Shown here piece after piece: positions 4,794 through 45,096 of a DNA stretch of 64,000 bases. The position numbers and the translations under genes are program-made. Location: IMG/VR virus record IMGVR_UViG_3300042891_000711, positions 1-64,000 of that record; one strand, given 5' to 3'. Every line of letters starts with the position of its first letter. The stretch's first letter is position 1. The notes under the pieces were generated by a model. The model saw only the letters and a list, made by a program, of their open reading frames with translations, made no database searches and was not told the DNA's origin.

Positions 4794-4852
4794 TGTAGAT
4801 GCCTAATTAGGGTCTACAACTACTACTTGCTTTTTATAAGGAGAAAACAATG
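4794..4852 (+). promoter_or_regulatory. ROSE-like RNA thermometer in the dnaK 5' UTR
   Basis: hairpin TGTAGATGCCT-AATT-AGGGTCTACA, then CTTGCTT-TTTAT-AAGGAG, pairing UUGCU with the SD around a bulged G. Confidence 0.7.
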
Positions 4853-6766
4853 AGCAAAAATACAATCATAGGTATTGACCTAGGCACCACTAATTCTTGT
4901 GTGGCCATTCTTGAAAATAACAAATCACGTGTAATTGAAAATAACGAAGGTGCTCGTACTACACCAAGTATCGTTGCCTACGGCGATGAAATTATTGTAG
5001 GTGCTAGTGCTAAACGTCAAGCAGTTACTAATCCAAAAAACACAATCTACGCCAGCAAACGACTTATTGGTCGTAAGTTTGATGAAGACGCTGTACAAAA
5101 AGACATTGACCTAATGCCTTACAAGATCGTTAAAAACGAAAATGGTGATGCATGGGTTGAAGTCAACGGTGACAAACTAGCACCTCCACAAATTTCAGCA
5201 GAAGTTCTGCGCAAAATGAAATTGACAGCAGAAGACTATTTAGGTTACAGTGTAACGCAGGCAGTTATCACAGTCCCTGCGTACTTTAACGACAGTCAAA
5301 GACAAGCTACTAAAGATGCTGGTAAGATTGCCGGCTTGGAAGTACTCCGTATTATTAACGAGCCTACTGCGGCCGCACTGGCATTTGGTTGCGATAAAGG
5401 TGATAAGAAAGACCGTAAGATTGCTGTGTATGACCTAGGTGGTGGTACATTTGATATCAGTATCATTGAAATCAGCGACATCGACGGCGAAAAACAATTT
5501 GAAGTATTATCTACCAATGGTGATACATTCCTAGGCGGTGAAGACTTTGACCAACGTATTATGGAATACTTGGTAGATGAGTTTAAGAAAGAGTCTGGCA
5601 TTGACTTAAAACAAGATATGCTAGCCCTACAACGTCTTAAAGAATCAGCTGAAAAAGCTAAAATTGAATTGTCAAGTTCAACACAGACAGATGTAAACTT
5701 ACCTTACATCACTGCTGATGCAACCGGTCCTAAACACTTGTCAGTTAAACTAACACGTAGTAAGTTTGAAAGTTTAGTTGAAGATTTAATTAAACGTTCG
5801 ATTGACCCATGTAAAATTGCTGTTAAAGACTCTGGTATTAACATCAGTGACATTGACGATGTTATCTTAGTCGGTGGTCAGACACGTATGCCTAAAGTAC
5901 AAGAAGCTGTTGAAGCATTCTTTGGTCGTGCACCACGTAAAGACGTTAACCCAGATGAAGCTGTGGCAGTTGGTGCGGCAATTCAAGGTGCGGTATTGGG
6001 TGGCGATAAGACTGATGTATTGTTACTAGACGTAACTCCACTATCATTGGGTATTGAAACAATGGGTGGTATTATGACCAAGCTGATTAAGAAAAATACA
6101 ACTATCCCAACCAAAGCAAGCCAAACATTCTCCACAGCAGAAGACAATCAACCAGCTGTGACTGTTATGGTAGCACAGGGTGAGCGTGAGTTTGTCAAGG
6201 ACAACAAAGTACTTGGTCAGTTCAATTTAGAAGGTATCGAACCACAACGTCGTGGCCAACCGCAGATTGAAATTACACTTGACATCGATGCTAACGGTAT
6301 TCTTAAAGTAAGTGCTAAAGATAAAGCAACTGGCAAAGAAAACAAGATTACTATCAAAGCTAACTCAGGTCTAACCGAAGAAGAAATTGATGCAATGGTA
6401 CGTGATGCAGAAGTTAATGCTGATGCAGATAAAAAATTGCGTGAATTAGTTGATGCACGTAACCAAGCTGAAGCACAGGTTCACGATGTTAAGAAAACTG
6501 TAGAAGAAGCTGGTGACGCGGTAACTGCTGAACAGCATACTGCAATCAATGATGCAATTACCGCGGTTGAAGAAGCCATCAAGGGTGATGATGTAGAAGC
6601 TATTAAATCAGCAATGGTAAAATTAGCAGAACCAGTAGCACCAATCTATCAAGCTAAACAAGCACAAGAGTCAGCAACAGTTGAGCCTGGTGCACAAACA
6701 GCTTCAGATGCGCAAGATGGTGTTGTTGATGCTGAATTTACAGAAGTTGACAAGGAGAGTAAATAA
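4850..6766 (+). CDS. dnaK: Hsp70 chaperone DnaK
   Basis: [31 protein letters not shown]-terminal VVDAEFTEV. Confidence 0.98.
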
Positions 6767-7230
6767 TGAAACAAGTTTACACAACCCTTGACATCCCTAG
6801 CATCTATAAGTTTGCTATCGGCTTCGATGAGTTATTTTCACAACTGCAACACTTAGAGCAACGCGGTAAGGATTCGGGCTACCCACCGTTTAATCTAATT
6901 AAACTAAACGAAACTAACTACGCCATTGAATTAGCAGTAGCTGGTTTTGCTGAAGATGAATTAGATGTAGAAATTGAAAACGGTGAATTAGTTATCCGCG
7001 GCACTAACCGTGAAGTCAGCTTAGAAGAAGCTCTTCATGACCTTGAACATAATCCAGTTGAGTATATCCATCGTGGTATTGCGGCTCGTGACTTTGTTAA
7101 ACGCATCAAGTTAGCCGAGGGTGTAGAAGTTAACTCAGCACACGTTAAGAACGGTATCCTAACAGTTAAATTGGAACAATTCACACCTGAACCAGTTAAA
7201 CAAAAGGTTGCAATTTCTTTCGAAAAGTAG
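6766..7230 (+). CDS. small heat shock protein Hsp20/IbpA family
   Basis: IGFD, YPPFNL, ELAVAGF, YIHRGIAARDF, NGILTV. Confidence 0.95.
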   Translation: MKQVYTTLDIPSIYKFAIGFDELFSQLQHLEQRGKDSGYPPFNLIKLNETNYAIELAVAGFAEDELDVEIENGELVIRGTNREVSLEEALHDLEHNPVEYIHRGIAARDFVKRIKLAEGVEVNSAHVKNGILTVKLEQFTPEPVKQKVAISFEK

Positions 7231-7294
7231 TAGTATAGTAATAAGGGTGGAGGAAACTCCACCCATCCTCAACAAAAATACAAAGAGAGAAGAT

Positions 7295-7600
7295 ATGGCC
7301 AAGGCAATTGCAAAAGTTAAAACAACACCAAACTTATCAGTCAAAGAACCCAGTATGTACAAGGTCATTTATATCAATGATAATGTAACAACTATGGAAT
7401 TTGTTATTGAAAGTCTGCGTGTGGTATTTGATATTGCCGTTGACACTGCAATTGAAATTACACAAACTATTCACGAAGAAGGCAGTGCAACAGTTATTGT
7501 GTTACCTTATGAAATGGCAGAACAAAAAGGTGTTGAAGCAACACAACTTGCTAGAGCAAATGGCTTTCCACTTGTAATTAAACTTGAACCTGCTGCATGA
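7295..7600 (+). CDS. clpS: N-degron adaptor ClpS
   Basis: PSMYKVIYINDNVTTMEFVI...IHEEG...AEQK...FPL; start moved to ATG 7295. Confidence 0.9.
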   Translation: MAKAIAKVKTTPNLSVKEPSMYKVIYINDNVTTMEFVIESLRVVFDIAVDTAIEITQTIHEEGSATVIVLPYEMAEQKGVEATQLARANGFPLVIKLEPAA

Positions 7601-8214
7601 GAAACTTGTTAGTAATAGGTGATAGTTTTTGTGATCACAGATATATAGATACAGACTGGCCTGTGTATTTGTCGAACCTATTAAATTTAAATTTAATTGG
7701 TGCCGGTTTACCTGGCGAATCTTGGTGGTTCATAAGAGAACATTTTATGAAAATTTATACATCGGATGAATTTAAAAAAACTGATCTTATTGTATATTGT
7801 CACACTGACCCAAATAGGATTATTGGTACTGATGGTACCTTACGCATAGGAGATGACGATCCGGATGTTATTAAACTTTATTTGACAAAATTACAAAATC
7901 TTAAATTCAATGATTGGTGTTGTCGACAATGGTTCAAAGAATTAAATAATCTATTAGCGGACAAAAAAGTAATACATGTTCAAAATTTTCCTTTAACTTC
8001 TAAATATTTTAATAAGTTAAACGGAGTTAAAGTTGATAGAACGACATTGTACGATTTAAGTTTAAGAGAACTTACCGATTGTAACAAATTCATATATGAT
8101 ACTAGAAACAACCATTTCAGCACAGAAAATAATTTAAAAATTGCAAACATGTTATTTGAAATAGTTAATACAACCACTAATTGGCAGAATGAAACTCGGG
8201 AATTACAATTTTGA
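7597..8214 (+). CDS. SGNH/GDSL-like hydrolase or acyltransferase
   Basis: N-terminal LLVIGDSF and C-terminal D..NHF; AT-rich. Confidence 0.55.
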   Translation: MRNLLVIGDSFCDHRYIDTDWPVYLSNLLNLNLIGAGLPGESWWFIREHFMKIYTSDEFKKTDLIVYCHTDPNRIIGTDGTLRIGDDDPDVIKLYLTKLQNLKFNDWCCRQWFKELNNLLADKKVIHVQNFPLTSKYFNKLNGVKVDRTTLYDLSLRELTDCNKFIYDTRNNHFSTENNLKIANMLFEIVNTTTNWQNETRELQF

Positions 8215-8696
8215 TTTTTAATAAAATTAAAGAACTCAAGCAAGAAGGTAAGAAAATTGGTATAACTTTTAGTACGTTTGACATGCTACATGCTGGCCAT
8301 ATAGCTATGTTAAGCGAAGCTAAAAATCATTGTGATTACCTAATTTGTGGTCTACAAACAGATCCAACTATTGATCGTCCCGATACTAAGAATAAACCTA
8401 TTCAAAGTATTGTTGAACGTCAGATCCAGCTAGCCGCTTGTCGCTATGTAGATGAAGTAGTTATCTACCAAACAGAACAAGACCTAATTGACCTGTTGCT
8501 AATCTTACCATTGGATGTGCGTGTCTTAGGTGTTGAATATGAACACGAAGAGTTTACAGGGCGAGAGGAATGTATGATGCGTAACATTGAATTGGTATTT
8601 AATGGACGTGACCATAGTTTCTCTAGTTCAAGTTTGCGTAAGCGTGTAGCACATGCTGAAACAATTAAACTATTAAAGGATGAGCATAATGGGTAA
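8211..8696 (+). CDS. cytidylyltransferase (TagD-like)
   Basis: TFDMLHAGH (HXGH) motif, YVDEV, RDHSFSSSSLRKR; TTG start. Confidence 0.9.
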   Translation: MIFNKIKELKQEGKKIGITFSTFDMLHAGHIAMLSEAKNHCDYLICGLQTDPTIDRPDTKNKPIQSIVERQIQLAACRYVDEVVIYQTEQDLIDLLLILPLDVRVLGVEYEHEEFTGREECMMRNIELVFNGRDHSFSSSSLRKRVAHAETIKLLKDEHNG

Positions 8697-8868
8697 TATT
8701 AAAATTGGTTTATTAATGATCATTGCATGGCTTGCATTAGTGTGGGCAGTGTATGGTTCAAGTGTAGAACACATCACTATGAAATATGATTGTGCTATTG
8801 CAGAAATTAGCCCAGATGTTCCGCAAACTGTTAAAGAACAATGTAGAAAGTTGATGCAGAAGAGATAA
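8680..8868 (+). CDS. small membrane protein (start may be ATG 8689)
   Basis: one TM helix, then YDC..AEISPD.P..VKEQCR. Confidence 0.6.
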   Translation: MSIMGNIKIGLLMIIAWLALVWAVYGSSVEHITMKYDCAIAEISPDVPQTVKEQCRKLMQKR

Positions 8869-8869
8869 C

Positions 8870-9577
8870 TTACTTAGTTCTAGGTCCTAATCCGGGTATC
8901 CAACCTAAACTAATATACTCGTTAAATAACTCAGGTGATATGTATTTTCTATCACATGTTTCCTTGTTATGTACCCAGCGTTTGCCAATAAGTGATTGTT
9001 TAATCTTTTCCGCTTTTTCGTCTGAGCAAGGTGGGCGAACATTCCACCCAGGAGTTCCTGCTCGTAGTTTGCGAGTAACAGATATTTTAGATACTTCTTC
9101 ATCTGTTCGAGCAATACCTTTATTCCAACTTGATTGCCCTTGCCTTGATAATGATAACTTTTCTCTCCATTCGAGAGTAAAATCTTCTGATGTGCGTCCT
9201 GTTTTTCTACCGTAGTTAGGATTGAGCGGACCTGTTAAAGTTTTAAGATATTCTGCTCGTTGTGATTTAAGTTTTTCGTATATAGTAGATGTCATTTTGT
9301 AGTCGTGTTTGCTGTTCTTACCTTTACAGCACATACGCCAAGCCGCGTGAAACATTTTAATTTGTGCCTGGCCTGTAGTCATTTTTGGTAGTAATAAATG
9401 ACAAACAAAGTGTTCTCGTGCTGTTAGGCTTACTAAGTTATCTTTAGAATTATTGCCACCTAAACTTTTTGGTATAATATGATGGCGTTCTATATATGTT
9501 TCTGGTGATAAAGTTCTTGACTTTGCGTTAGATACTATGTTAAAATAATACTTAGAATATTTATTTTGTAAATACAT
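8870..9577 (-). mobile_element. free-standing HNH homing endonuclease with NUMOD-type C-terminal repeats
   Basis: ERHHIIPKSLGGNNSKDNLVSLTAREHFVCHLLL; NPNYG/WNKG/EKIKQS DNA-binding repeats; antisense to neighbours; start ATG 9577 with AAGGAG SD. Confidence 0.85.
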
Positions 9578-9647
9578 TTGCTGTAACTCCTTTTCAGTTA
9601 TAGAGTAGTTGGATATCCCCATATCGCGAACTACATTATTATTTATC
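9578..9647 (-). promoter_or_regulatory. late promoter plus two-hairpin structured leader of the HNH gene
   Basis: minus strand: TAAATA, GTAGTT-CGC-GATAT-GGGG-ATATC-C-AACTAC, then TAACT-GAAAAGG-AGTTA covering the SD. Confidence 0.6.
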
Positions 9648-9662
9648 TCATAAAGGAATAAA

Positions 9663-10202
9663 ATGAGTTTTTCGGTTATGCTTGATTTAGAAACACTAAG
9701 TACCCGCCCAGAAGCAACTATCTTAACATTTGGCGCTATTAAGTTTAGCCCATACAATCAAGAGCCTATGACAGATGGTATCTACTATCGTATTAATGTT
9801 GATGAACAAATTGAGTTAGGTAGCCATGTAGACGAAAACACTGTAGCATGGTGGGGCACCCAAGCAGAAGATGTGCGTGAAGAAGCACTTAGTCCTGAGA
9901 ACCGTATTAGCCTAGAAGAGTTCACACAAAACTTAAATCGTTTCCTAGTAGGTGCTGACAATATTTGGGCACAAGGTCCGGTGTTTGATATTGTTATTTT
10001 AGAAAACTTATACAGACGATTGGGCAAACCTTGTCCATGGCAGTTCTGGCAGATCCGTGATAGTCGTACTTTGTTAAGTAGTCTAGGTGACCCACGTGAA
10101 AAGAACAAAGCAGGCCTGCATAATGCATTAGAAGATGCAGTCAGTCAAGCGCAGGCAGTCCAGTACGTGTTTAAACAAGCCGGAATTACGGAGAAACGAT
10201 AG
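9663..10202 (+). CDS. DEDDh 3'-5' exonuclease (DexA/Rv2179c-like)
   Basis: MLDLETL, WAQGPVFD, RDSRT, HNALEDA. Confidence 0.9.
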   Translation: MSFSVMLDLETLSTRPEATILTFGAIKFSPYNQEPMTDGIYYRINVDEQIELGSHVDENTVAWWGTQAEDVREEALSPENRISLEEFTQNLNRFLVGADNIWAQGPVFDIVILENLYRRLGKPCPWQFWQIRDSRTLLSSLGDPREKNKAGLHNALEDAVSQAQAVQYVFKQAGITEKR

Positions 10203-10522
10203 TGGAAATTATATTTGGTAGAGAAAACGCAGAAAAACTGCGTGAAAAGTACACTGTATTAGATTTAGAAACAGTTGAGCGAGATGGTGCAAGTCTTGAA
10301 GTATTTTGCCTAATTCCTGCTGATAAAATTAGCCTAGGTGATTTGCCTACGCTAGAACAATACACTAATCTACATGCAGAATTTTTACAAGGTTATAAGA
10401 ATAAACACTACGACTACTGTCGTCAGTGCATCACTTACCTAATGGGTAAGTTCTCCGGTGAAGTTGATACATTCTATGAAGAAATACTACGTAGAATTGA
10501 TCTAGAAGACCCTCCAAAGTAA
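10202..10522 (+). CDS. stand-alone homolog of the C-terminal region of the CHASE2 adenylate cyclase
   Basis: aligns by eye with the last ~110 aa of CDS 21801-23825; GTG start. Confidence 0.6.
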   Translation: MEIIFGRENAEKLREKYTVLDLETVERDGASLEVFCLIPADKISLGDLPTLEQYTNLHAEFLQGYKNKHYDYCRQCITYLMGKFSGEVDTFYEEILRRIDLEDPPK

Positions 10523-10542
10523 TACTATAAGTTAATTATATC

Positions 10543-10576
10543 AGAGCCCCCGTTAAATAATAATAACCGGGGCTTT
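10543..10576 (+). promoter_or_regulatory. hairpin with a late promoter in its loop, upstream of csgF
   Basis: AGAGCCCC-C-GTT...AAC-C-GGGGCTTT with TAAATA at 10554-10559. Confidence 0.55.
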
Positions 10577-10579
10577 CGC

Positions 10580-11077
10580 ATGAACAAACGTATGGTCTGC
10601 AATCTTTTATTGGTCGTCACGTTGACTGCTAGCGTTAATATTGCCAAGGCTGGCGAAATGGTGCACACATTCAGTAGCCCGGCATTCAGCGGACAGGGCT
10701 TTGGAATACATGCCCTTACGATTAAACAATTAGAAGATCAGGCCAAGGACAAGCGTGAATCTGCGGCAGAAGCTATACAGGCCAAAGCAGAATCTGCTGC
10801 ATTGAATACTCCGCAGGCTAGATTCATTGCTAACTTAGAATCAAGAATTTATAGTCAACTAGCAAAACAGCTAACTGACAGCATGTTTGGTGAAGGTGCT
10901 ACCTGTACTACAGCAGGAGTGGTATGCGGTAATATACCAAACCTGGGCGGTAACAGTATCGAGTGGAGTCTAGGCGCAGGTAGCGATAGTGGATTAATTA
11001 TTATTACTATACAGGATCTGGCTAATGTTGATAATGTAACAACAATGAAAGTGCCAGCAGGGACCTTTTACTTCTAA
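10580..11077 (+). CDS. csgF: curli assembly protein CsgF-like
   Basis: signal peptide, mature N-terminus GEMVHTFSSPAFSG, F..NLESRIYSQLA; directly upstream of csgG. Confidence 0.75.
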   Translation: MNKRMVCNLLLVVTLTASVNIAKAGEMVHTFSSPAFSGQGFGIHALTIKQLEDQAKDKRESAAEAIQAKAESAALNTPQARFIANLESRIYSQLAKQLTDSMFGEGATCTTAGVVCGNIPNLGGNSIEWSLGAGSDSGLIIITIQDLANVDNVTTMKVPAGTFYF

Positions 11078-11943: not shown

Positions 11944-11967
11944 TAGGATTTTAAAAATCCAAGGAGC

Positions 11968-12759: not shown

Positions 12760-12762
12760 TCA

Positions 12763-14987: not shown

Positions 14988-15056
14988 CAGCACTTAACTT
15001 AGCAATTATTAAGTTTAAATATTAAAAACGACATTAAGATCGTAAGGAGCAAGTCT

Positions 15057-17131: not shown

Positions 17132-17149
17132 ATAACTATAAATACTATT

Positions 17150-17248
17150 ATGTATACATGGCGCGAACGTATTATTTTCTTTGAAATTGTCCTTTTCTTC
17201 ACCCTTGTGTTTTCTATCCCCTACATAGAACAACTAATCCAACTGTAA
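17150..17248 (+). CDS. 32-aa hydrophobic peptide (not in ORF track)
   Basis: MYTWRERIIFFEIVLFFTLVFSIPYIEQLIQL; starts 5 nt after TATAAATA. Confidence 0.45.
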   Translation: MYTWRERIIFFEIVLFFTLVFSIPYIEQLIQL

Positions 17249-17282
17249 CAAAAATTTAATCTGTTTGTAACGCTACTGTAAT
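17243..17282 (+). promoter_or_regulatory. Pho-box array (PhoB-type direct repeats)
   Basis: CTGTAAC/ATTTAAT/TTGTAAC/CTGTAAT at 17243, 17254, 17265, 17276, an exact 11-bp period, upstream of phosphate-related genes. Confidence 0.75.
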
Positions 17283-17304
17283 CTTTGTGTGTTTAAATAT
17301 AATT

Positions 17305-18054
17305 ATGACCACAAGATATAAGACCATTTGTATATCCGACTTCCATCTTGGCACTAAAGATGCCAAGGCCGATCTATTAAACAATTTCCTTAAACATCAC
17401 ACCTGCGAAAATTTATTTCTTGTAGGTGACATAATCGACGGCTGGAAAATACAGCAGAACAAATGGCGTTGGCATCAAAGCCATACTAATGTAATACGTA
17501 GGATATTAGGCTATAGTAAACGAGGATGCAATGTAACCTATATAACTGGCAACCATGACGAATTCCTTCGTCCGTTAGTTAGTCATGGTTTTAATCTAGG
17601 TAATATTCGTATGGCCAATCAGGCAGAATACCGTAGTATCGATGGGGAACTATTTCTTATCACACACGGCGACTTGTTTGATGGTGTTACTAGACTAGCA
17701 CCGTGGTTAGGATTTTTAGGTGACAAGATGTATGATGTTGCTTTGTGGTTTAATAACTACTTTAACTTTGCCCGTAGAAAATTAGGGTTTGGTTATTGGA
17801 GTCTGAGTAAGTTTTTAAAAGCTCGTGTTAAAAAAGCAATGGGGTTTGTGTTTAAGTTTGAGCTTACTATGTTACAGTACGCACAAAAACGTGGATACGA
17901 TGGTGTTATCTGCGGACACATACACACACCCGAAATTAAACACATCAACGGCATGATTTATATGAATGACGGCGATTGGGTTGAAAGTTGTAGTGCCCTG
18001 GTAGAAGATTATGAAGGACGCTGGGATATTATATATTGGAATGAAATCAAATAG
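17305..18054 (+). CDS. metallophosphoesterase, PlcP/LpxH2-like (phosphate-starvation phospholipase C family)
   Basis: ISDFHLG, GDIIDGW, GNHDEFLR, HGD, CGHIH, NDGDWVES. Confidence 0.8.
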   Translation: MTTRYKTICISDFHLGTKDAKADLLNNFLKHHTCENLFLVGDIIDGWKIQQNKWRWHQSHTNVIRRILGYSKRGCNVTYITGNHDEFLRPLVSHGFNLGNIRMANQAEYRSIDGELFLITHGDLFDGVTRLAPWLGFLGDKMYDVALWFNNYFNFARRKLGFGYWSLSKFLKARVKKAMGFVFKFELTMLQYAQKRGYDGVICGHIHTPEIKHINGMIYMNDGDWVESCSALVEDYEGRWDIIYWNEIK

Positions 18055-18065
18055 GAGAAAGATGA

Positions 18066-19493
18066 ATGACGATACAACAGGTTAAATCAATAATGTATTA
18101 TGTAGTAATAGCATTTGCGCTATCAATGGCAGGGTTAAAGCAAGCGCATGCCGACAGCACCACTGACATTGTTAACGCACTAGTTATGAAAGGTGTACTT
18201 ACAGAAGAAGAAGGCGCATTATTAAATAAAGGACACAGTGGAGAAACAGGCGCTGCTAAAAAAGAAAAAGACACTACTGTTCATGCGGCTAGTAAAATGA
18301 GCATTCGTGGCTATTTACAAATGCGTAACACTACTATGCTCAGTGGTGATGAAGGAGTTAACCTTTGGTCAGATCGATCTGTAGGTGATAAAAACTCTCT
18401 TGCTGATCAAGACAAAAATTTCTTAATTCGTCGAGCACGTGTGATTATTTCTGGTTCTGCCGGTGACCGTTTAGATTACTACATTCAACCTGACTTTGCT
18501 AGTACAGCAGGTACTACAGGTAACGTAGCGCAATTACGCGATGCTTATGGTGATGTCAACTTGACCAAAGACAAAGTCCACCGCGTTCGTGTTGGACAAA
18601 GTAAAGTACCATATGGCTTTGAAAACTTACAGTCTTCACAAAATCGTCTAGCACTTGATCGTGCTGACGCATTTAATAGTGCGGTACGTGATGAACGTGA
18701 CTTGGGTGCGTTTTACTACTACACACCGGATAATGTGCAAAAACTCTTTAAAGAAATTCAAGATGGCGGACTAAAACACTCAGGCAACTACGGTATGTTT
18801 GGTTTAGGTATATATAACGGCCAAGGTGCTAACCAACAAGATCGTAACGACAACTACCATGTAGTGGCACGTGCTACTTACCCATGGAAAACTGAAAGCG
18901 GTCAAATTTACGAAGCTGGTGTACAGGGTTATACAGGCAAGTATGTAAGAACAGGCAGTGCTTATAGAAAAAATATGGGCAACAATGTCTACGCAACTAA
19001 AACACCAACATTAGAACCAGGCAATACAACTGGATTTAAAGATGAGCGTGTGGGTGTGAGTTTTATGATGTACCCTATGCCTTTCGGTTTGCAAGGTGAG
19101 TGGAACTGGGGTAAAACTCCTGGCTTAGATACTGCTGCTAGTACTGACGGCATTATTAAAGAAACTAATTTAAACGGTGGCTACATTCAAACTATGTATA
19201 AAATTGATAACTTCAAGGTGTTAGATACCAATGGTACATTAATTCCATTTGTTAGATGGCAATACTTTGATGGTGCGTCAAAAGCAGAAACTAACTCACC
19301 AATGAACAAAGTTAACGATTGGGAGTTGGGTGCTGAATGGCAAATTGCTCCAGAAGTTGAACTTGTGGCTTACTATCATATGATGAACCGTAGCAATTTA
19401 GTAACAGGCGCATCAGCTACTACACTAGTAAAACAAGACTATGCTAACTTTAAAGCAGATGCTTTACGGGTTCAGCTACAGTATAACTTTTAA
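18066..19493 (+). CDS. phosphate-selective porin OprO/OprP family
   Basis: signal peptide, LVMKGVLTEEE N-terminus, IRRAR, LRDAY, GQSKVPYGFENLQSS, C-terminal Phe. Confidence 0.85.
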   Translation: MTIQQVKSIMYYVVIAFALSMAGLKQAHADSTTDIVNALVMKGVLTEEEGALLNKGHSGETGAAKKEKDTTVHAASKMSIRGYLQMRNTTMLSGDEGVNLWSDRSVGDKNSLADQDKNFLIRRARVIISGSAGDRLDYYIQPDFASTAGTTGNVAQLRDAYGDVNLTKDKVHRVRVGQSKVPYGFENLQSSQNRLALDRADAFNSAVRDERDLGAFYYYTPDNVQKLFKEIQDGGLKHSGNYGMFGLGIYNGQGANQQDRNDNYHVVARATYPWKTESGQIYEAGVQGYTGKYVRTGSAYRKNMGNNVYATKTPTLEPGNTTGFKDERVGVSFMMYPMPFGLQGEWNWGKTPGLDTAASTDGIIKETNLNGGYIQTMYKIDNFKVLDTNGTLIPFVRWQYFDGASKAETNSPMNKVNDWELGAEWQIAPEVELVAYYHMMNRSNLVTGASATTLVKQDYANFKADALRVQLQYNF

Positions 19494-20633: not shown

Positions 20634-20655
20634 TTTATTGTTCCGTACTGCAATA

Positions 20656-20679: not shown

Positions 20680-20693
20680 CACGAATACGGGTT

Positions 20694-20759
20694 ATAAATT
20701 TTTTTAATGATAGGTATAAGAAAATTTAATTAGACAAGTGAAGTTAATAAGTGTAGTAT
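20694..20759 (+). promoter_or_regulatory. OxyR-type site abutting the sigma70 promoter of ahpC
   Basis: ATAA-N7-TAAT-N7-ATAA-N7-TAAT (20694-20730), then TAGACA-17-TAGTAT. Confidence 0.65.
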
Positions 20760-20783
20760 ATAATTTTAATCAAGGAGAAATAA

Positions 20784-21350
20784 ATGAGTTTAATCGGAAA
20801 ACAAGTAGAAGAATTTAAAGCACAAGCATACCAACAGGGTAAGTTTGTAGAAGTATCAGAGCAAGACTTAAAAGGTAAATGGAGTGTGTTATTCTTTTAT
20901 CCAGCAGACTTTACATTTGTCTGCCCAACAGAATTAGCAGACCTACAAGACGTATACGCAAGTGACTTCAAAGGCTTAGGCGTTGAAGTATACAGTGTAA
21001 GCACAGACACACACTTTGTACACAAAGCATGGGCAGATGCTACAGACACAATCCGTAACATCACCTACACAATGATTGGTGATGCTAACCATCAGTTGGC
21101 TCGTCAATTTGGTGTGCTAATTGAAAGCGAAGGCTTAGCCGACCGCGGTACGTTTGTTATTGATCCAGATGGTGTAGTACAGATCATTGAGATCAATCCA
21201 GGTGGTGTAGGTCGCGATGCTAAAGAGTTGCTACGTAAAGTTAAAGCAGCAAAATACACACGTGAACATCCAGGTGAAGTATGCCCGGCTAAATGGCAAG
21301 AAGGAAGTGCTACACTAGCACCAAGTTTGGATTTAGTAGGTAAACTATAA
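20784..21350 (+). CDS. ahpC: alkyl hydroperoxide reductase C (2-Cys peroxiredoxin)
   Basis: [13 protein letters not shown] and GEVCPAKW. Confidence 0.97.
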
Positions 21351-38812: not shown

Positions 38813-39433
38813 ATGTCAACTTTAGTCCCAATGGTAGTAGAACGTACAAGTCAAGGCGAACGTAGCTATGACATTTATTCACGTTTGCTTAAAGATCGTA
38901 TCATCATGTTAGATACAGATGTTAACGAGCATACTGCTAGTTTAATTGTAGCGCAGATGCTGTTCTTAGAAAGCGAAAGCCCAGAGAAAGACATATTGTT
39001 CTATATCAATAGCCCGGGAGGCAGTGTTACAGCAGGTCTAGCTATCTACGATACGATGCAGTTTATTAAATGCGATGTGTCAACTATTGTACTCGGACAA
39101 GCATGTTCAATGGGTAGTTTCCTAGCACAAGCTGGTGCACCAGGCAAGCGTATTGTTCTGCCAGAAGCACGTACAATGATTCACCGTGTTAGTTCGGGTA
39201 CTCCGGGTACACGTGGTTCAGTTCATGTACAAGACCTACAGTTTGAAGATGCTAAACGTAGCTTTGAAGAAAGTGTACGTATTAACAAGCGTTTAACAGA
39301 ACTGTATGCACGCCATAACACTGCTGGTAAAACATATGACGAACTATATGAAGCAATGAAGTTTGATACATTCTTATCAGCAGACGAAGCAGTGGCCTAC
39401 GGTTTAGCTGACGAAGTGATCACTAAACGTTAA
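38813..39433 (+). CDS. clpP: Clp protease proteolytic subunit
   Basis: [39 protein letters not shown]. Confidence 0.95.
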
Positions 39434-40749
39434 TGCTTAAAGATACATTTTGCTCCAGTCCCTGGTTCCATATTAGAATAGATCCTGCGGGTAAATACCT
39501 ACCTTGTCGATGGAGTAGTCACCAAGATACTACAGGTTATACTGTGGCTAACATTACTATTTTAGGATTTATGAACAGTGATATCATGCAAGGTATCCGA
39601 GCTAAGATGTTAGATGGCGAGTCTGTGCCTATGTGTAGTTCATGTCATTATGATGAGTCTAACAATAAAGTAAGTGGTCGGCACCGTCAACTACTTAAAA
39701 GTGCAATTAACGTTGATAATTTTGATAAGACATTTTGCAGCAGTCCGCATTGGCCGATGTTTGAAAATACCTTTGCAAATGCTGAGAATGACAATTATCA
39801 ACCGGTTGATTTTCAAATTGATCTGGGTAATACTTGTAATAGTGCGTGTATTATGTGCTCACCGACTTATAGTAGCAAATTGGCTGCAGAATATCCTAAA
39901 CTAATTAATTTTGAGCCCACGTTATTTAAACAGTCGCAATCTTTTAAGAATTGGGCAGATGATCCGGCTTTGGTAGATAAGTTTGTTAATGAATTGTCAG
40001 CTATTCCTGGTATCAAATACATACATTTCTTAGGTGGCGAGACCCTATACTTAAAAAGTTTTTATGATATCTGCAATCGTTTGATAGAATTAGATCTAGC
40101 TAAAAATATTAGTATAGGTACTACTACTAACTGTACTGTTTACTCTGAAGAGCTTGAATATATTATTCGTAATTTTAAACATGTGCATTTGGGACTTAGT
40201 GTAGAAGCTATACATAACGTTAACGATTATATACGTTACCCTAGCAACATTAAGCAAGTGTCTACAAATATTGCTAGATTTTTACAGTTACGCGAATTAT
40301 ATAATATACAATTGAGCTTGCGCATCACTCCAAACATTTTTAGTATCTATTATTTAGATACTATATTCAAATTGATGCTTACTGAACAAGTTATTGCAGA
40401 AAGTTGTTGGATACTACATAATCCAAGTTGTTTACGTATCGAAGTACTACCTAAAGAATTAATAGCAGTATGTTTAGCTAAAATTAACCAAGTTATCCAA
40501 CAGTATCATTTGGTTCAAGATACTCAGACTATTATTAATCGACGTAGGGAAGATTTAATAGATCCTGTTATCAGCCAGATTATTTTCGAATACAAACATC
40601 TATTAGAAAACGTAATAGTACCCAACAACGTAGAAGAAGAACGCTATAACCTAGTCAAATACATTCGAGCATTTGAGCAAGTACACAATAATACAATTTT
40701 GGATTATCTACCCGAATATGAAGAATTTTTACGAAGCTACGGTTACTAA
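39433..40749 (+). CDS. radical SAM protein with N-terminal twitch/SPASM-like domain
   Basis: FCSSPW..PC..CSSC, CNSACIMC, GGE. Confidence 0.88.
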   Translation: MLKDTFCSSPWFHIRIDPAGKYLPCRWSSHQDTTGYTVANITILGFMNSDIMQGIRAKMLDGESVPMCSSCHYDESNNKVSGRHRQLLKSAINVDNFDKTFCSSPHWPMFENTFANAENDNYQPVDFQIDLGNTCNSACIMCSPTYSSKLAAEYPKLINFEPTLFKQSQSFKNWADDPALVDKFVNELSAIPGIKYIHFLGGETLYLKSFYDICNRLIELDLAKNISIGTTTNCTVYSEELEYIIRNFKHVHLGLSVEAIHNVNDYIRYPSNIKQVSTNIARFLQLRELYNIQLSLRITPNIFSIYYLDTIFKLMLTEQVIAESCWILHNPSCLRIEVLPKELIAVCLAKINQVIQQYHLVQDTQTIINRRREDLIDPVISQIIFEYKHLLENVIVPNNVEEERYNLVKYIRAFEQVHNNTILDYLPEYEEFLRSYGY

Positions 40750-42710: not shown

Positions 42711-42953
42711 ATGTTAGCACGTAGTTTAATATTTGTGGCACTATTAGCAGTGGGTGTAGCACAAGCAGATGAGCAGAGTAATGTTGTTAATCAACAGCAA
42801 CTAGCTAAACGTTCATATGCGGCACCTGTTAAAGAGAAAGAAGTTCTTGAAGGTGCTAGTGTAACAGAAGAAGTAGTAGTTGATAAAAAACATCAGACGT
42901 TGCGTTTACACATGTTAGGAAAACTTCCATACATGGAAAAAGCAACTGATTAA
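42711..42953 (+). CDS. small secreted protein
   Basis: signal peptide ending AQA; AGGAG SD. Confidence 0.75.
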   Translation: MLARSLIFVALLAVGVAQADEQSNVVNQQQLAKRSYAAPVKEKEVLEGASVTEEVVVDKKHQTLRLHMLGKLPYMEKATD

Positions 42954-42960
42954 AGAAATT

Positions 42961-43295
42961 GTTGTAGAAGCTCTAAAGTAATACATGTTGGACGGCGGTT
43001 CGATTCCGCCCAGGTCCACCAAAAGCATATTGTCACTAAGGTCCCGTAAGGATTATGTCTTTGGCAAGATAGTATGCTTCTGATGGGCCTGACCAGGTTT
43101 CGACAGCGTGAGATAGGATAAGAGTCAACACGTGGGGTCACGTAAAATACAAAACTCGTAAATGCAAACGCAAATACAAAAGACGTAGTTAAAGTGTCAA
43201 TGGGTCGTGGCTTCCGCTTCGGTTCACGCACTGAAGCTTTAGCAGCCTAAGAAACTGCTCGTCCGGGGTAGCTATACCTTGTTACCAAAAATAGT
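42961..43295 (+). ncRNA. ssrA: circularly permuted two-piece tmRNA
   Basis: acceptor piece with T-arm GGCGG-TTCGATT-CCGCC and CAGGTCC-A-CCA (ends 43021) precedes the coding piece starting GGGCCTG (43085); G3-U70 pair; tag frame 43164-43250 ending ALAA; outer ends approximate. Confidence 0.93.
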
Positions 43296-43326
43296 AGAAA
43301 GCTCACTTCGGTGGGCTTTCTTTTTG
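43296..43326 (+). terminator. intrinsic terminator after tmRNA
   Basis: AGAAAGCTCAC-TTCG-GTGGGCTTTCT-TTTT. Confidence 0.85.
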
Positions 43327-43386: not shown

Positions 43387-44535
43387 ATGACAACATACGC
43401 AGATAAAGCAAACAGTTTTTATAATCAGAAAGAGAGTCACTTTATATCCTTGCGCGAACGATTGGTCGAAAGCCTGGGAGATACTTTCGAACCGTTACTA
43501 GATCGAATTGCTGAAGAATTTAAGCGCAGACATACGCAATGGGAACAATTTACTGATTTACAGATTTGTCAAGCAATTATGGTTCCTATGGACAAAATAT
43601 TAATTGACACTACAATGCAACGTAAAGTAAATCTTCAACATATTTTGAATATTTTGCATTATTTTAAAGAAACAATGATCATGGCTATTCAAGTATATGA
43701 AGATCCAACTCGCCCTGGTTATTATATTGCATGGGACGGGCAACACACGGCCCTTGTACTGTATATCTTAGCAACTAAGGTTTTTGGCCAACGTATTGCT
43801 AATTTAATGGTTCCAGTAGTTGTATACAGTATTAAACAAAAAGCAGATATACGTCGTAACTTTATTTTGCTTAATGGTGATGCCAAAGATCCTTTGGATT
43901 TTATTGATATTTTACGTCAGATGATTTGTGGTGTGCGTATCGATGGTAGCGAGGATAAAATTTGGCAAGCTGCCGAACTTAAACAACGCTATTTGGAGAA
44001 AGCTGGATTATTTGCCACCGATGCCAAGTTTGGTGATGAGAATGAATCTGGAGCATTTACTTTGCTTGCAGATACTTTATGTAGTAAAAGTGACAAGACT
44101 CTCAAAGATCCAGAAGTAACTCGAATGTTTGCAGATTATTGGGTATTAATTAACCAAGCTCGACCAGTTGACGCTAAGGAAGCTAGACAGTTATATGAAT
44201 TTTTTGACGCTTGTTTCCGTGAAAATATTACAGTAGATAATGCGTATCTTAAAGAATTTGCGCAGTTTACATTGGATTATTTTGATGCAGATTTTAATTC
44301 AAAAGGTCCGTTTTGGGATAAAGTAAAAATGGCTTATGATAAATGGTATCGTAAGGCTAATCCAGAAGGCGAATTAGATGAACGCACTGGTGAGATTAAG
44401 ATTAAGGGATTCACAAAAGAATGGAAATGTGGAGGGCCGTTCTTACTAGCTCAATTACGTGCGAGTACTAAATTGCAAGTACCTAATTACGATGCAGACA
44501 GTGATTTTGTTCCAGCTAAAAAGGATCTTTGGTAA
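43387..44535 (+). CDS. ParB/DndB-like DGQH-motif protein
   Basis: IDTTMQR...IQVY...YIAWDGQHT...FILLN; own promoter TTGACA-17-TATAAT. Confidence 0.65.
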   Translation: MTTYADKANSFYNQKESHFISLRERLVESLGDTFEPLLDRIAEEFKRRHTQWEQFTDLQICQAIMVPMDKILIDTTMQRKVNLQHILNILHYFKETMIMAIQVYEDPTRPGYYIAWDGQHTALVLYILATKVFGQRIANLMVPVVVYSIKQKADIRRNFILLNGDAKDPLDFIDILRQMICGVRIDGSEDKIWQAAELKQRYLEKAGLFATDAKFGDENESGAFTLLADTLCSKSDKTLKDPEVTRMFADYWVLINQARPVDAKEARQLYEFFDACFRENITVDNAYLKEFAQFTLDYFDADFNSKGPFWDKVKMAYDKWYRKANPEGELDERTGEIKIKGFTKEWKCGGPFLLAQLRASTKLQVPNYDADSDFVPAKKDLW

Positions 44536-45005
44536 TGGCTAAACTACGTACCCCAGACCAAGATAAACATAAGAATTTTAGGTTACTTACTGCGCAGTTG
44601 CGTACTACACCGGTTTGTAAGTTGGAAGATTGTTGCAACCCACTTAGCGACTATGAAGGACCTGGCAGTGATAGTTTATGCCGAGAACATCAACTTGAGC
44701 AAGTCGAGTATGGTGGAATGGGCAAAGCAAGTCGTCCGCATACATTTTACCGTGCTTGGGTATGCACTAAATGTAAGTACGACGCAAGACTCGATCCTGA
44801 GATTTTAGAAATTGAAGATCCATGGGATCAATTGGTAGTTATGCGCGGAGTGATGCATGGTGACCATTTAATTCGTAAGAGTGATGGCGGCAAGGATACT
44901 AAAGAAAACATCAACGCACTTTGCTGTAGATGTCATATGATTAAAACTTATAAAGAGAAAGATTATCTTAAAGGTAATAAAAATAAATCTACAGAAACCC
45001 GTTGA
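44535..45005 (+). CDS. zinc-binding HNH endonuclease
   Basis: CTKC...HGDHLIRKSDGGKDTKENINALCCRCHMIKT; TAATG-coupled to the upstream gene. Confidence 0.85.
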   Translation: MAKLRTPDQDKHKNFRLLTAQLRTTPVCKLEDCCNPLSDYEGPGSDSLCREHQLEQVEYGGMGKASRPHTFYRAWVCTKCKYDARLDPEILEIEDPWDQLVVMRGVMHGDHLIRKSDGGKDTKENINALCCRCHMIKTYKEKDYLKGNKNKSTETR

Positions 45006-45029
45006 CATAAGTAATTATCTGTAATACAC

Positions 45030-45093
45030 TATGTATTTCGTGCCTGACTTAGGGCGTGTACATAATTTTATTTGCTTAATAAAGGAGTAATAA

Positions 45094-45096
<3 letters not shown>
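45030..45096 (+). promoter_or_regulatory. ROSE-like RNA thermometer in the groES 5' UTR
   Basis: hairpin with TGCCT...AGGGC core, then TTATTTGCTT-AATA-AAGGAGTAA pairing UUGCU with the SD. Confidence 0.7.

What the first reader, a model, noticed from the sequence alone, without database searches (positions are those of the whole stretch)
4794..45096. Auxiliary modules each carry a matching host-type stress sensor (heat, peroxide, phosphate)
Seen: ROSE-like leaders at dnaK and groES, an OxyR-spaced site at ahpC and a Pho-box array at the phosphoesterase-porin pair. In each case the element fits the function of the downstream gene, and several sit beside phage late-type TAAATA/TAAGTA motifs. Inference: the phage has an environment-responsive regulatory layer that reads host regulons on top of the early/late programme. 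I know of phage Pho boxes (cyanophage pstS), but not of this three-sensor combination.
Basis: inference. Interest (0 to 1): 0.7.

Follow-up and report, generated by a model that had tools for sequence, protein, structure and literature searches.

The report
Phage chaperone thermometer leaders, phosphate-box promoter
A large freshwater phage puts a conserved ROSE-like "RNA thermometer" leader in front of its own dnaK and groES chaperone genes and a host-type phosphate-starvation (Pho box) promoter in front of its phosphate-uptake genes, but the proposed peroxide (OxyR) sensor at ahpC is no better than chance.

Summary
Two of the three claimed sensors hold up.

**Heat.** dnaK and groES each have a two-hairpin leader. 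In the second hairpin, UUGCU pairs with the AAGGAG ribosome-binding site and leaves a bulged G. This motif occurs only at these two genes in the 219-kb genome. The leader is conserved with compensatory base changes across over 100 viral contigs, upstream of dnaK, groES and ibpA-type genes. It is absent from the 80 closest bacterial dnaK loci. A weak version sits on Burkholderiales ibpA. It scores below the Rfam ROSE cut-offs, and thermosensing is inferred, not shown.

**Phosphate.** Tandem Pho boxes at 17243-17282 include the best genome-wide match to a matrix built from Burkholderiales pstS promoters. They lie 11 nt upstream of a TAAATA -10. They are conserved in relatives ahead of a phosphoesterase, PstS or porin O/P gene. 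Bacterial homologues of the phosphoesterase also carry Pho boxes.

**Peroxide.** The ahpC upstream region scores at chance level against E. coli and Burkholderiales OxyR motifs. It is replaced in most close relatives.

The parts
4753..4781 (+). sigma-70-like promoter of dnaK (TTGACA-17-TATTAT)
   Evidence: Scores 11 of 12, the joint-best match in 4400-21400. Conserved in close relatives.
4783..4789 (+). ATAAATA late-type promoter motif just upstream of hairpin I
   Evidence: The motif is strongly enriched in non-coding DNA (28 of 42 copies). It is conserved 4-5 nt before hairpin I in dnaK leaders down to 74% DnaK identity.
4794..4818 (+). dnaK leader hairpin I (stem, bulged G 4801, CCU/AGG apex)
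   Evidence: Predicted by RNAfold. Aligns with hairpin I of ROSE_3. Five stem pairs show compensatory changes across 65 leaders.
4826..4843 (+). dnaK leader hairpin II: anti-SD CUUGCUU (4826-4832, bulged G 4829) paired with SD AAGGAG (4838-4843)
   Evidence: Consensus structure on the MAFFT alignment. The motif is unique to two sites in the genome.
4850..7230 (+). dnaK (4850-6766) and the overlapping IbpA-like hsp20 (6766-7230)
   Evidence: Pfam HSP70 at 844 bits and HSP20 at 55 bits. NCBIfam IbpA at 100.7 bits, below its cut-off.
17243..17282 (+). tandem Pho boxes (distal 17243-17260, proximal 17265-17282)
   Evidence: Read directly from the sequence. Matrix rank 1 and rank 12 of about 438,000 positions. 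Conserved in relatives.
17294..17299 (+). -10-like TAAATA, 11 nt after the proximal Pho box and 5 nt before the ATG
   Evidence: Read directly from the sequence. The same 11-nt spacing is seen in G145 and G147.
17305..19493 (+). LpxH-like metallophosphoesterase (17305-18054) and phosphate-selective porin O/P (18066-19493)
   Evidence: Pfam Metallophos and Porin_O_P. Atlas neighbours are LpxH-like. Bracketed by identical terminators at 17112-17125 and 19500-19513.
20688..20783 (+). ahpC upstream region: claimed OxyR site (about 20688-20730, not supported) and sigma-70-like promoter 20731-20759
   Evidence: Searches show chance-level scores. One search shows no conservation. One search finds TAGACA-17-TAGTAT.
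20784..21350 (+). ahpC
   Evidence: NCBIfam AhpC equivalog at 319.6 bits, above the cut-off of 272.
45002..45030 (+). sigma-70-like promoter of groES (TTGACA-17-TACACT, with TAAGTA after the -35)
   Evidence: Relatives carry TTGACATAAATA at this position.
45030..45064 (+). groES leader hairpin I (core 45039-45056, bulged G 45042)
   Evidence: RNAfold. Model R1 scores 54.4 bits. Covariation in relatives.
45070..45088 (+). groES leader hairpin II: anti-SD UUUGCUU (bulged G 45074) paired with SD AAGGAG (45082-45087)
45094..47002 (+). groES (45094-45387) and groEL (ORF listed from 45365; the true start is probably a few codons later)
   Evidence: Pfam Cpn10 at 111.7 bits and Cpn60 at 246.6 bits.

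Best explanation
The window belongs to a freshwater jumbo phage, probably of a Burkholderiales host. It carries two genuine condition-sensing control elements.

(1) The chaperone transcription units dnaK-hsp20 and groES-groEL start with a leader of about 60 nt. It has the architecture of the short ROSE-like RNA thermometers.
- Hairpin I is stable and has a bulged G.
- Hairpin II is weak. In it, U(U/C)GCU pairs imperfectly with the Shine-Dalgarno sequence across a bulged G, and the AUG is left outside the hairpin.
- Inferred mechanism: at low temperature hairpin II hinders 30S binding, and warming melts it so that translation rises. No host factor is needed.
- Hairpin I probably stabilises the 5' end and helps folding.
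- The phage lineage carries the same leader on ibpA-type genes. It appears to have extended an ibpA-type thermometer to dnaK and groES.

(2) The phosphate module (LpxH-like phosphoesterase plus porin O/P, and PstS in relatives) is driven by a promoter whose -35 region is replaced by tandem Pho boxes of the Burkholderiales type. These lie 11 nt upstream of a TAAATA -10. Host PhoB~P would therefore activate the promoter under phosphate starvation.

ahpC has only an ordinary sigma-70-like promoter.

Shown here: the sequence, uniqueness, conservation, covariation and host-lineage resemblance of both elements. Inferred: temperature response, PhoB dependence and transcription start sites.
For: ROSE-like leader
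- The motif occurs only at dnaK and groES in 219 kb. Covariance model R1 also finds only these two sites.
- The dnaK leader aligns full-length to ROSE_3, including the GAUGCC..GGGUC apex.
- The anti-SD/SD motif lies upstream of dnaK at all 81 loci checked (80 viral contigs plus the window) and of groES at 46 of 81.
- R1 also hits ibpA-type sHSP genes that were not in the seed alignment.
- RNAalifold on a plain MAFFT alignment of 65 distinct leaders gives the two hairpins. It leaves an unpaired G between the pairs of the UUGCU arm, opposite the SD.
- 91.9% of cells are paired against 79.6% when shuffled. There are 117 compensatory cells against 41. Slid controls give 55-68% paired.
- On 90 distinct model-aligned leaders, 97.4% of cells are paired.
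- U-G is the commonest pair at two conserved positions. That fits an RNA structure and not a DNA palindrome.
- None of the 80 closest bacterial dnaK loci has the element. 141 Burkholderiales genomes gave only one spurious hit.
- Three of four Burkholderiales ibpA homologues have an R1-shaped leader ending at the ATG.

Pho box
- A matrix built from 16 Burkholderiales pstS-upstream sites ranks 17265 first and 17243 twelfth of about 438,000 positions. The two sites are 22 bp apart.
- The element heads operons whose first gene is the phosphoesterase, PstS or porin O/P in different relatives.
- It is kept, with sequence drift but the same 11-nt spacing to TAAATA, in G145 (DnaK 86% identical) and G147 (74%).
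- In 11 of 16 Burkholderiales loci holding a 46-51% identical phosphoesterase, the best matrix hit of the locus lies within 250 nt upstream of that gene.
Against: - Neither leader reaches an Rfam ROSE gathering score (35.9 against 43; no hit for groES). None of the leaders of 20 relatives does either.
- The nearest-neighbour energy model predicts only weak SD masking. Hairpin II is about -0.7 to -2.1 kcal/mol at 37 C. The SD unpaired probability is 0.61 at 10 C and 0.91 at 37 C for dnaK, and about 0.5 at all temperatures for groES.
- Both genes rank among the least masked of 126 genes in the genome.
- Hairpin II is almost invariant in sequence, so covariation supports mainly hairpin I.
- No transcription start site or expression data exist. 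The lake metatranscriptome material is contigs only and may include DNA.
- The host is inferred, not known.
- The Pho-box score of 15.1 bits is below the training range of 17-23.6 bits.
- Bioinformatic Pho boxes in phages have proved unreliable without binding assays (PMC10976474).
Confidence: 0.6

Rival explanations
1. The chaperone leader is a temperature-independent expression tuner. Hairpin I protects the 5' end of the mRNA. The weak anti-SD pairing merely sets a fixed translation rate for abundant chaperone mRNAs.
For: - Predicted SD masking is weak and, for groES, almost flat with temperature.
- Hairpin I is the part with covariation.
- A 5'-stabilising role for hairpin I is discussed for the Pseudomonas element (PMC3669281).
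Against: - The element occurs only at heat-shock chaperone genes (dnaK, groES, ibpA), 2-3 times per 200-380-kb genome.
- It keeps the specific U(U/C)GCU plus bulge signature of characterised thermometers. A generic tuner would not need that signature.
Confidence: 0.2
2. The conserved leader is a binding site for a trans-acting factor: a phage or host protein (for example chaperone feedback) or a small RNA. It would then not be a direct sensor.
For: - The apex of hairpin I (U/C-G-CC ... GGG) and the CUUGCUU stretch are more conserved in sequence than pairing alone requires.
Against: - No candidate factor was identified.
- The same features are explained by the ROSE-like architecture, in which hairpin II alone suffices for thermoregulation (PMC3669281).
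Confidence: 0.1
3. The reading of the first stage as written: three host-regulon sensors (heat, peroxide, phosphate), each matched to its module.
For: The heat and phosphate elements are real and fit their genes.
Against: - The OxyR site is at chance level against both E. coli and Burkholderiales motifs.
- The ahpC upstream region is replaced by unrelated sequence in 5 of 7 relatives with 91-97% identical AhpC. In the other two, ATAG is changed to GTAG.
- A ROSE-like RNA reads temperature directly, not a host regulon.
Confidence: 0.08
4. The 11-bp-phased TGTAAY repeats are an AT-rich phased promoter-upstream feature or a phage regulator site, not a PhoB site.
For: - The half-sites read TGTAA rather than the TGTCA usual in the first half-site of the bacterial boxes.
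- The score is below the training range.
- Predicted phage Pho boxes can fail binding tests.
Against: - It is the genome-wide top hit of an independently derived host-lineage matrix.
- TGTAAY is the usual second half-site in Burkholderiales pstS promoters.
- The element is tied to phosphate genes through gene shuffling and divergence.
- Bacterial homologues of the esterase carry Pho boxes.
Confidence: 0.12

Closest known systems
Short ROSE-like RNA thermometers of Pseudomonas ibpA (Rfam ROSE_3, RF02523; PMC3669281)
   Same: - 5'UTR of about 60 nt with two hairpins.
- A stable hairpin I with a GAUGCC..GGGUC-type apex.
- Hairpin II in which U(U/C)GCU pairs imperfectly with the SD.
- AUG outside the hairpin.
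- Full-length alignment of the dnaK leader to the model.
   Different: - Below the gathering score (35.9 against 43). groES and 20 relatives give no Rfam hit.
- AU-rich stems without the flanking G-C clamps.
- Located in phage genomes.
- Sits on dnaK and groES as well as ibpA-type genes.
Classical ROSE elements of rhizobial small heat-shock genes (Rfam ROSE, RF00435)
   Same: Bulged G opposite the SD, a U(U/C)GCU anti-SD, and heat-shock gene context (description in PMC11182007).
   Different: Classical ROSE has three to four hairpins and 70-120 nt. Here there are two hairpins, or three in some relatives. No Rfam match.
Pho boxes on cyanophage genes (pstS of P-SSM2; S-PM2d genes; PMC10976474)
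   Same: A phage auxiliary gene placed under the host PhoB/PhoR system through a host-type Pho box.
   Different: - The motif type is proteobacterial (TGTCAY/TGTAAY 7-mers, 11-bp period), not the cyanobacterial PyTTAAPyPy(T/A).
- The host is heterotrophic.
- The cargo is an LpxH-like phosphoesterase plus porin O/P (plus PstS in relatives).
Burkholderiales PhoB-dependent pstS and phosphoesterase promoters (derived here)
   Same: Two 7-mers with a 4-nt spacer, a second half-site reading TGTAAY, 10-11 nt to the -10, and the same downstream gene families.
   Different: The first half-site in the phage reads TGTAAC rather than TGTCAY. The score is below those of the bacterial sites.
Known phage RNA thermometers (lambda cIII, SPbeta blyA, a gut Caudoviricetes sigma-70 gene; PMC11182007)
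   Same: A cis-acting 5' RNA structure in a phage gene proposed to sense temperature.
   Different: These are single cases of other structural types. Here a ROSE-like family is conserved over more than 100 contigs and sits on the phage's own chaperone genes.
OxyR-activated ahpC promoters
   Same: Only the downstream gene (ahpC).
   Different: No OxyR motif above chance.

Membership tests
ROSE-like RNA thermometer | Lies in the 5'UTR of a heat-shock gene, downstream of a promoter | tested here: met
   The leaders lie between promoter-like sites and the dnaK and groES start codons. The genes are identified.
ROSE-like RNA thermometer | [quoted passage not shown] | tested here: met
   The RNAalifold consensus on 65 leaders gives two hairpins. 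Some relatives have three hairpins.
ROSE-like RNA thermometer | Conserved U(U/C)GCU anti-SD imperfectly paired with the SD | tested here: met
   UUGCU is present at both genes and nowhere else in 219 kb in this arrangement. The G-C-U-U of the motif is invariant and the preceding U nearly so in 65 leaders. UCGCU and UUACU variants occur in relatives.
ROSE-like RNA thermometer | Bulged G opposite the SD | tested here: met
   Predicted only. There is an unpaired G between pairs 66-80 and 68-79 of the consensus. The position is an A in the UUACU variants.
ROSE-like RNA thermometer | Reaches the Rfam gathering score of ROSE, ROSE_2 or ROSE_3 | tested here: not met
   dnaK scores 35.9 bits against 43. 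groES has no hit. The 20 relatives have none.
ROSE-like RNA thermometer | Temperature-dependent opening of the SD hairpin and of translation | tested here: inconclusive
   In silico only. For dnaK the SD unpaired probability rises from 0.61 at 10 C to 0.91 at 37 C. For groES it stays near 0.5. Neither gene is an outlier among the 126 genes. Experiments are needed.
PhoB-dependent (Pho box) promoter | Direct 7-nt repeats with a 4-nt spacer (11-bp period) | tested here: met
   Repeats at 17243, 17254, 17265 and 17276. A degenerate pattern finds only one non-coding site in the genome.
PhoB-dependent (Pho box) promoter | Matches the Pho box of the presumed host lineage | tested here: met
   Rank 1 of about 438,000 positions with a matrix from 16 Burkholderiales pstS promoters, at 15.1 bits against 17-23.6 for training sites.
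PhoB-dependent (Pho box) promoter | The box replaces the -35 and ends about 10 bp upstream of the -10 | tested here: met
   11 nt lie between 17282 and TAAATA at 17294-17299. The spacing is the same in G145 and G147. The bacterial sites have comparable spacing.
PhoB-dependent (Pho box) promoter | Downstream genes belong to the phosphate-starvation response | tested here: met
   Porin O/P and PstS in relatives. Homologues of the esterase carry Pho boxes in 11 of 16 Burkholderiales loci.
PhoB-dependent (Pho box) promoter | PhoB~P binding and induction under phosphate limitation | not testable with these tools
   Needs a gel shift or footprint, and infection transcriptomics.
OxyR-regulated ahpC promoter | Four ATAG-type elements with OxyR spacing | tested here: not met
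   12 of 20 consensus positions. 0.28% of genome positions do as well.
OxyR-regulated ahpC promoter | Matches the OxyR site of host-lineage ahpC promoters | tested here: not met
   1.6 bits against 19-38 for 16 Burkholderiales sites. Rank 417, which is expected by chance with probability about 0.27.
OxyR-regulated ahpC promoter | Conserved upstream of orthologues | tested here: not met
   5 of 7 close relatives have unrelated upstream sequence. In the other 2 the ATAG is changed to GTAG.
T4-type late promoter (TATAAATA class) | Motif enriched in intergenic DNA at a fixed short distance upstream of genes | tested here: met
   28 of 42 ATAAATA copies lie in the 5.9% of the genome that is non-coding, mostly 15-40 nt before start codons. 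Control 7-mers give 4-13 non-coding copies of about 80-150.
T4-type late promoter (TATAAATA class) | Recognised by a phage late sigma factor; late timing | not tested
   No search for a gp55-like factor and no timing data.

The most novel reading that the evidence does not exclude
A lineage of freshwater jumbo phages has built its own trans-factor-free heat-shock regulon. It copied an ibpA-type ROSE-like RNA thermometer onto dnaK and groESL. The closest bacterial dnaK loci lack this element, and it was not found in a sample of 141 Burkholderiales genomes. From established knowledge, bacteria control these genes through sigma-32 or HrcA. The weak, AU-rich sensing hairpin would be tuned to the low temperature range of lake hosts. 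Phage chaperone output would then follow water temperature independently of the host stress response.
Probability: 0.45. Interest if true: 0.75.

Novelty: new variant of a known kind. Interest (0 to 1): 0.63.

Why it matters
- Very few RNA thermometers are known in phages (PMC11182007 counts three). ROSE-like elements are known mainly from small heat-shock genes, and lately from ABC transporters (PMC12857270).
- A family conserved over more than 100 phage contigs on phage-encoded DnaK, GroES and IbpA would show that phages regulate auxiliary chaperones through a self-contained physical sensor. It would also widen the gene repertoire of ROSE-type control.
- It offers a compact, directly testable set of natural variants: UUGCU, UCGCU and UUACU, with two or three hairpins.
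- The Pho-box module extends host-PhoB control of phage genes from cyanophages to phages of heterotrophic freshwater bacteria. It also adds new cargo: an LpxH-like phosphoesterase and porin O/P.
- Rejecting the OxyR site prevents an over-reading of 'one sensor per module'.

Tried and rejected
- **OxyR at ahpC.** Tested with the E. coli consensus, with a matrix from 16 Burkholderiales ahpC promoters, and by conservation. All three were negative.
- **LexA box** (CTGT-N8-ACAG) as a fourth sensor, for example at uvdE. There is one match inside a gene, at chance level.
- **ROSE_3 search of 141 Burkholderiales genomes.** It found nothing, but the tool's control genomes did not ring either, so the result is uninformative.
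- **Spurious R1 hits.** The hit in a Methylophilaceae genome (L280, 25 bits) lacks a ROSE-type GCC/GGG hairpin I. The Burkholderiales hit (L281, 29 bits) sits before a peptide transporter. The third R1 hit in G145 lies inside a coding region.
- **'freshwater-2' Rfam motif.** Both leaders score weakly, at 20-24 bits against a gathering score of 50. The similarity lies mainly in the SD-to-AUG tail and the motif has no CUUGCUU, so it was rejected.
- **TTGACATAA as a promoter class.** No consistent pattern.
- **Lake metatranscriptome contigs.** They show 90-99% identical relatives of the dnaK region in RNA libraries. They give no 5' ends and cannot exclude DNA carry-over.
- **PDB sequence search for the phosphoesterase.** No hit.
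- **Whole-window Rfam scan.** At gathering thresholds it finds only the tmRNA.

Full report
**What the sequence is**

The window is the first 64 kb of a 218,902-bp IMG/VR virus record, estimated 62% complete. One relative, G145, is a complete 329-kb genome with terminal repeats. Two window ORFs match phage tail or virion families.

- DnaK 4850-6766, with an overlapping IbpA-like Hsp20 at 6766-7230 and ClpS at 7208-7600.
- A metallophosphoesterase at 17305-18054 and a phosphate-selective porin O/P at 18066-19493.
- AhpC at 20784-21350 (NCBIfam equivalog, 319.6 bits).
- GroES at 45094-45387 and GroEL ending at 47002.

**Heat element: what is in the window**

Both chaperone operons have a sigma-70-like promoter: TTGACA-17-TATTAT at 4753-4781 and TTGACA-17-TACACT at 45002-45030. 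Each promoter is followed by a leader with two hairpins.

- Hairpin I (4794-4818; core 45039-45056) has a stem, a bulged G and a CC(U)/(A)GG apex.
- Hairpin II pairs CUUGCUU (or UUUGCUU) with AAGGAG and leaves the G of UUGCU unpaired.
- TTGCT-N3-9-AGGAG occurs exactly twice in the whole record on both strands, at these two genes. The hairpin-I apex motif is also found only there.
- Against Rfam, the dnaK leader aligns over the full ROSE_3 model, including the GAUGCC..GGGUC apex. It scores 35.9 bits (E 3e-6 for that small search), below the gathering score of 43.
- The groES leader gives no ROSE match.

**Heat element: conservation**

Searches of IMG/VR with DnaK and GroEL returned 80 loci each.

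- The anti-SD/SD motif is present upstream of dnaK at all 81 loci checked (window included), down to 73% DnaK identity. It is present upstream of groES at 46 of 81.
- A plain MAFFT alignment of 65 distinct leaders (A1) folds with RNAalifold into the same two hairpins with the bulged G.
- Pair counting on A1 gives 91.9% of cells paired, against 79.6% after shuffling. There are 117 compensatory cells against 41. With the partner slid by 1-3 columns, 55-68% are paired.
- All five lower pairs of hairpin I show double changes.
- Hairpin II is nearly invariant, as expected for an SD partner. Only its outermost pair switches, UA to AU, in 15 sequences.
- U-G is the commonest pair at one conserved position in each hairpin. 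That argues for RNA pairing and against a DNA operator.

A covariance model built from A1 (R1) gave these results:
- It finds only the two sites in the phage's own genome, at 62.5 and 54.4 bits.
- It finds one to three sites per genome in five large relatives. The third, low-scoring hit in G145 lies inside a coding region.
- It finds many additional sites in the fetched loci that were not in the seed. Nearly all precede proteins of about 145 aa with the IbpA signature, or a second dnaK.

In this phage lineage the element therefore marks dnaK, groES and ibpA-type genes.

**Heat element: relation to bacteria**

- The 80 closest bacterial dnaK loci are mostly beta- and gammaproteobacteria, at most 75% identical. 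They contain no R1 match apart from one 18.7-bit hit at E 0.87.
- Of 141 sampled Burkholderiales genomes, one gave a 28.9-bit hit. It precedes a peptide transporter and is spurious.
- IbpA-type genes are rare in that order: 4 of 81 genomes.
- With filters off, three of those four have an R1-shaped leader of 16-21 bits that ends exactly at the ibpA start. It has a bulged hairpin I and UCGCUU...AAGGA.
- The likely history (inference) is that an ibpA-type ROSE-like leader of proteobacterial origin was spread within the phage lineage to dnaK and groES.
- None of the leaders of 20 diverse relatives reaches an Rfam gathering score. By Rfam's criterion this is not an annotated member of ROSE, ROSE_2 or ROSE_3.

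**Heat element: mechanism and its weak point**

- The architecture equals that of the experimentally studied Pseudomonas ibpA thermometers. Those have a 61-62-nt UTR and two hairpins, with U(U/C)GCU paired to the SD and the AUG unpaired. Hairpin II melts between 25 and 42 C, while hairpin I stays stable and possibly stabilises the transcript (PMC3669281).
- The defining ROSE-like features are summarised in PMC11182007.
- ViennaRNA gives only modest support here. Isolated hairpin II is worth -2.6 to -4.7 kcal/mol at 20 C and -0.7 to -2.1 at 37 C.
- The SD unpaired probability for dnaK rises from 0.61 at 10 C to 0.91 at 37 C. For groES it stays near 0.5.
- Among 126 genes with a recognisable SD, the two leaders rank 116th and 98th for masking.
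- From established knowledge, ROSE hairpins rely on non-canonical pairs that nearest-neighbour models ignore. An AU-rich sensor could also suit cold lake hosts.
- The thermosensor function remains an inference. I give it about 0.55-0.6.

**Late-type motif**

- ATAAATA is strongly concentrated in non-coding DNA. 28 of 42 copies lie in 5.9% of the genome, and same-composition 7-mers give 4-13 non-coding copies out of about 80-150.
- It usually lies 15-40 nt before a start codon.
- One copy (4783-4789) lies 4-5 nt before hairpin I. It is the most conserved upstream feature of dnaK leaders in distant relatives.
- Another copy lies at 17138-17144.
The motif's recognition factor and timing were not tested.

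**Phosphate element**

- Upstream of the phosphoesterase lie four 7-mers in 11-bp phase: CTGTAAC, ATTTAAT, TTGTAAC and CTGTAAT, at 17243-17282. Eleven nt further on is TAAATA (17294-17299), and 5 nt after that the ATG.
- A degenerate two-half-site pattern finds only this non-coding site in 219 kb.

To obtain a host reference, I used the PstS of a relative (L169) to fetch homologues.
- Homologues at E <= 1e-20 occur in 28 of 81 Burkholderiales genomes. The best 20 are 59-68% identical.
- 16 of 20 upstream regions carry an obvious Pho box, (C/T)TGTCA(C/T)-N4-(C/T)(T/C)GTAA(C/T), 63-130 nt before the start.
- A matrix from those 16 sites ranks 17265 first of about 438,000 positions in the phage genome, at 15.1 bits. 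It ranks 17243 twelfth, second among non-coding sites and exactly 22 bp upstream.

The element is conserved in relatives.
- In close relatives the same box heads operons that begin with different genes. These are the phosphoesterase (window, L168), PstS (L169, L171) and the porin O/P itself (L163, L165-167, L173).
- In G145 (DnaK 86% identical) and G147 (74%) a diverged box sits before the orthologous phosphoesterase. The boxes read CTGTAAT-ATTA-CTGTAAC and TTGTAAT-CTTA-TTGTAAT. Both keep the 11-nt spacing to TAAATA.

The bacterial homologues tell the same story.
- The esterase has homologues at E <= 1e-10 in 34 of 81 Burkholderiales genomes. Most are 40-52% identical.
- In 11 of the 16 best loci, the top matrix hit of the roughly 3.7-kb locus lies within 250 nt upstream of the gene.
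- The phage arrangement therefore mirrors a host-lineage Pho-regulon unit.

PhoB binding itself is untested. A cyanophage study warns that predicted Pho boxes need binding assays (PMC10976474).

**Peroxide element**

- ahpC has a sigma-70-like promoter, TAGACA-17-TAGTAT, at 20731-20759. This lies after a terminator-like stem-loop that follows a small pqqA gene.
- The best match to the E. coli OxyR consensus in 20600-20783 is 12 of 20 specified positions. 0.28% of all genome positions reach that score, so about 0.8 are expected by chance in the region.
- Burkholderiales ahpC promoters show a clear ATAG-N7-CTAT-N15-AATCAATT site in 16 of 24 loci.
- The matrix from those sites scores 1.6 bits at best upstream of phage ahpC, against 19-38 bits for the training sites. 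That is rank 417, with a chance probability of about 0.27 for a region of this size.
- Among seven relatives with 91-97% identical AhpC, five have a wholly different upstream sequence. In the other two the ATAG is changed to GTAG.
- The OxyR claim is rejected.

**Host and setting**

These are inferences from several lines.
- DnaK is closest to betaproteobacterial proteins.
- PstS (59-68%), AhpC (55-69%) and the esterase (40-52%) have good Burkholderiales homologues.
- The tmRNA is of the two-piece beta type.
- The Pho box has the TGTAAY half-site typical of Burkholderiales.
- Lake-water and freshwater metatranscriptomes contain 90-99% identical relatives of 4400-8400. These are contigs only. 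They give no 5' ends and do not exclude DNA carry-over.

**Comparison and novelty**

- I found no description of ROSE-like leaders on phage chaperone genes in the held literature.
- Phage DnaK is known in other aquatic large phages, without mention of such leaders (PMC12619734).
- Only three phage RNA thermometers are counted in PMC11182007.
- ROSE-like control beyond sHSPs is reported for ABC transporters, not for dnaK or groES (PMC12857270).
- Host-PhoB control of phage genes is established for cyanophages.

**Verdict**

The heat element is a new variant of a known kind. The phosphate element is a new member of a known kind.

Noticed in passing
20562-20633 (+): A 23-codon ORF encodes a PqqA precursor peptide (NCBIfam TIGR02107, 40.4 bits against a cut-off of 20). 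It lies directly upstream of ahpC and is followed by a terminator-like stem-loop at about 20660-20677. The same pqqA-ahpC adjacency occurs in L178, L179, L182, L183 and L187. No pqqB-E genes were looked for.
   Followed up: partly
4497-4733 (+): Phage-encoded ribosomal protein bS21 (TIGR00030, 60.7 bits) lies immediately upstream of the dnaK promoter. It has its own ATAAATA motif at 4464.
   Followed up: partly
42915-43321 (+): A two-piece (permuted) tmRNA of the betaproteobacterial type: Rfam beta_tmRNA at 97.7 bits and tmRNA_permuted at 111.3 bits. It ends in a terminator at 43296-43321.
   Followed up: no
17101-17130 and 19489-19518 (+): An identical terminator sequence of about 30 nt (TTTAATAAATTGCCCCGAAAGGGGCTTTTT) brackets the phosphoesterase-porin pair, like the ends of a cassette. 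In relatives the cassette content varies (with or without PstS, with or without the esterase, and with a general porin upstream).
   Followed up: partly
17294-17307 (+); L350 (G147) about 1480-1500 (-): The phosphoesterase ATG lies 5 nt (window, L168) or 6 nt (G147) after the TAAATA -10 and has no SD. This suggests a leaderless mRNA. G145 instead has an SD and a GTG start.
   Followed up: partly
17305-18054 (+): The Pho-box-driven esterase is LpxH-like. Protein-atlas structural neighbours include fusions to GT4 glycosyltransferases. This recalls the PlcP-Agt lipid-remodelling pair of phosphate-starved bacteria (PMC4796936). It is possibly a phage PlcP-like phospholipase C. This was not tested against a reference PlcP.
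   Followed up: partly
7208-7600 (+): A ClpS adaptor homologue follows dnaK and hsp20, making a chaperone and proteolysis cluster.
   Followed up: no
7592-8212: Metatranscriptome contigs from two lake studies join 7592 to 8212. Relatives therefore lack the 205-codon ORF 7597-8214.
   Followed up: no
21801-23825 (+): A CHASE2 sensor domain fused to an adenylate/guanylate cyclase lies next to ahpC. It is a possible signalling gene of the phage.
   Followed up: no
12763-14987; 24967-25767; 28874-29914; 39433-40749 (+): Other host-like cargo: a FecR-domain protein, a PA14/curlin-repeat protein, an S11 D-Ala-D-Ala carboxypeptidase, the UV endonuclease UvdE, and a twitch-domain radical SAM protein (256 bits).
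   Followed up: no
L026, L030, L033, L043 and others (dnaK leaders): A sub-lineage has three hairpins (an extra GGGC..GCCC stem). It also has UUACU instead of UUGCU, so the bulged base is A rather than G. This is a natural variant series for testing the role of the bulge.
   Followed up: partly
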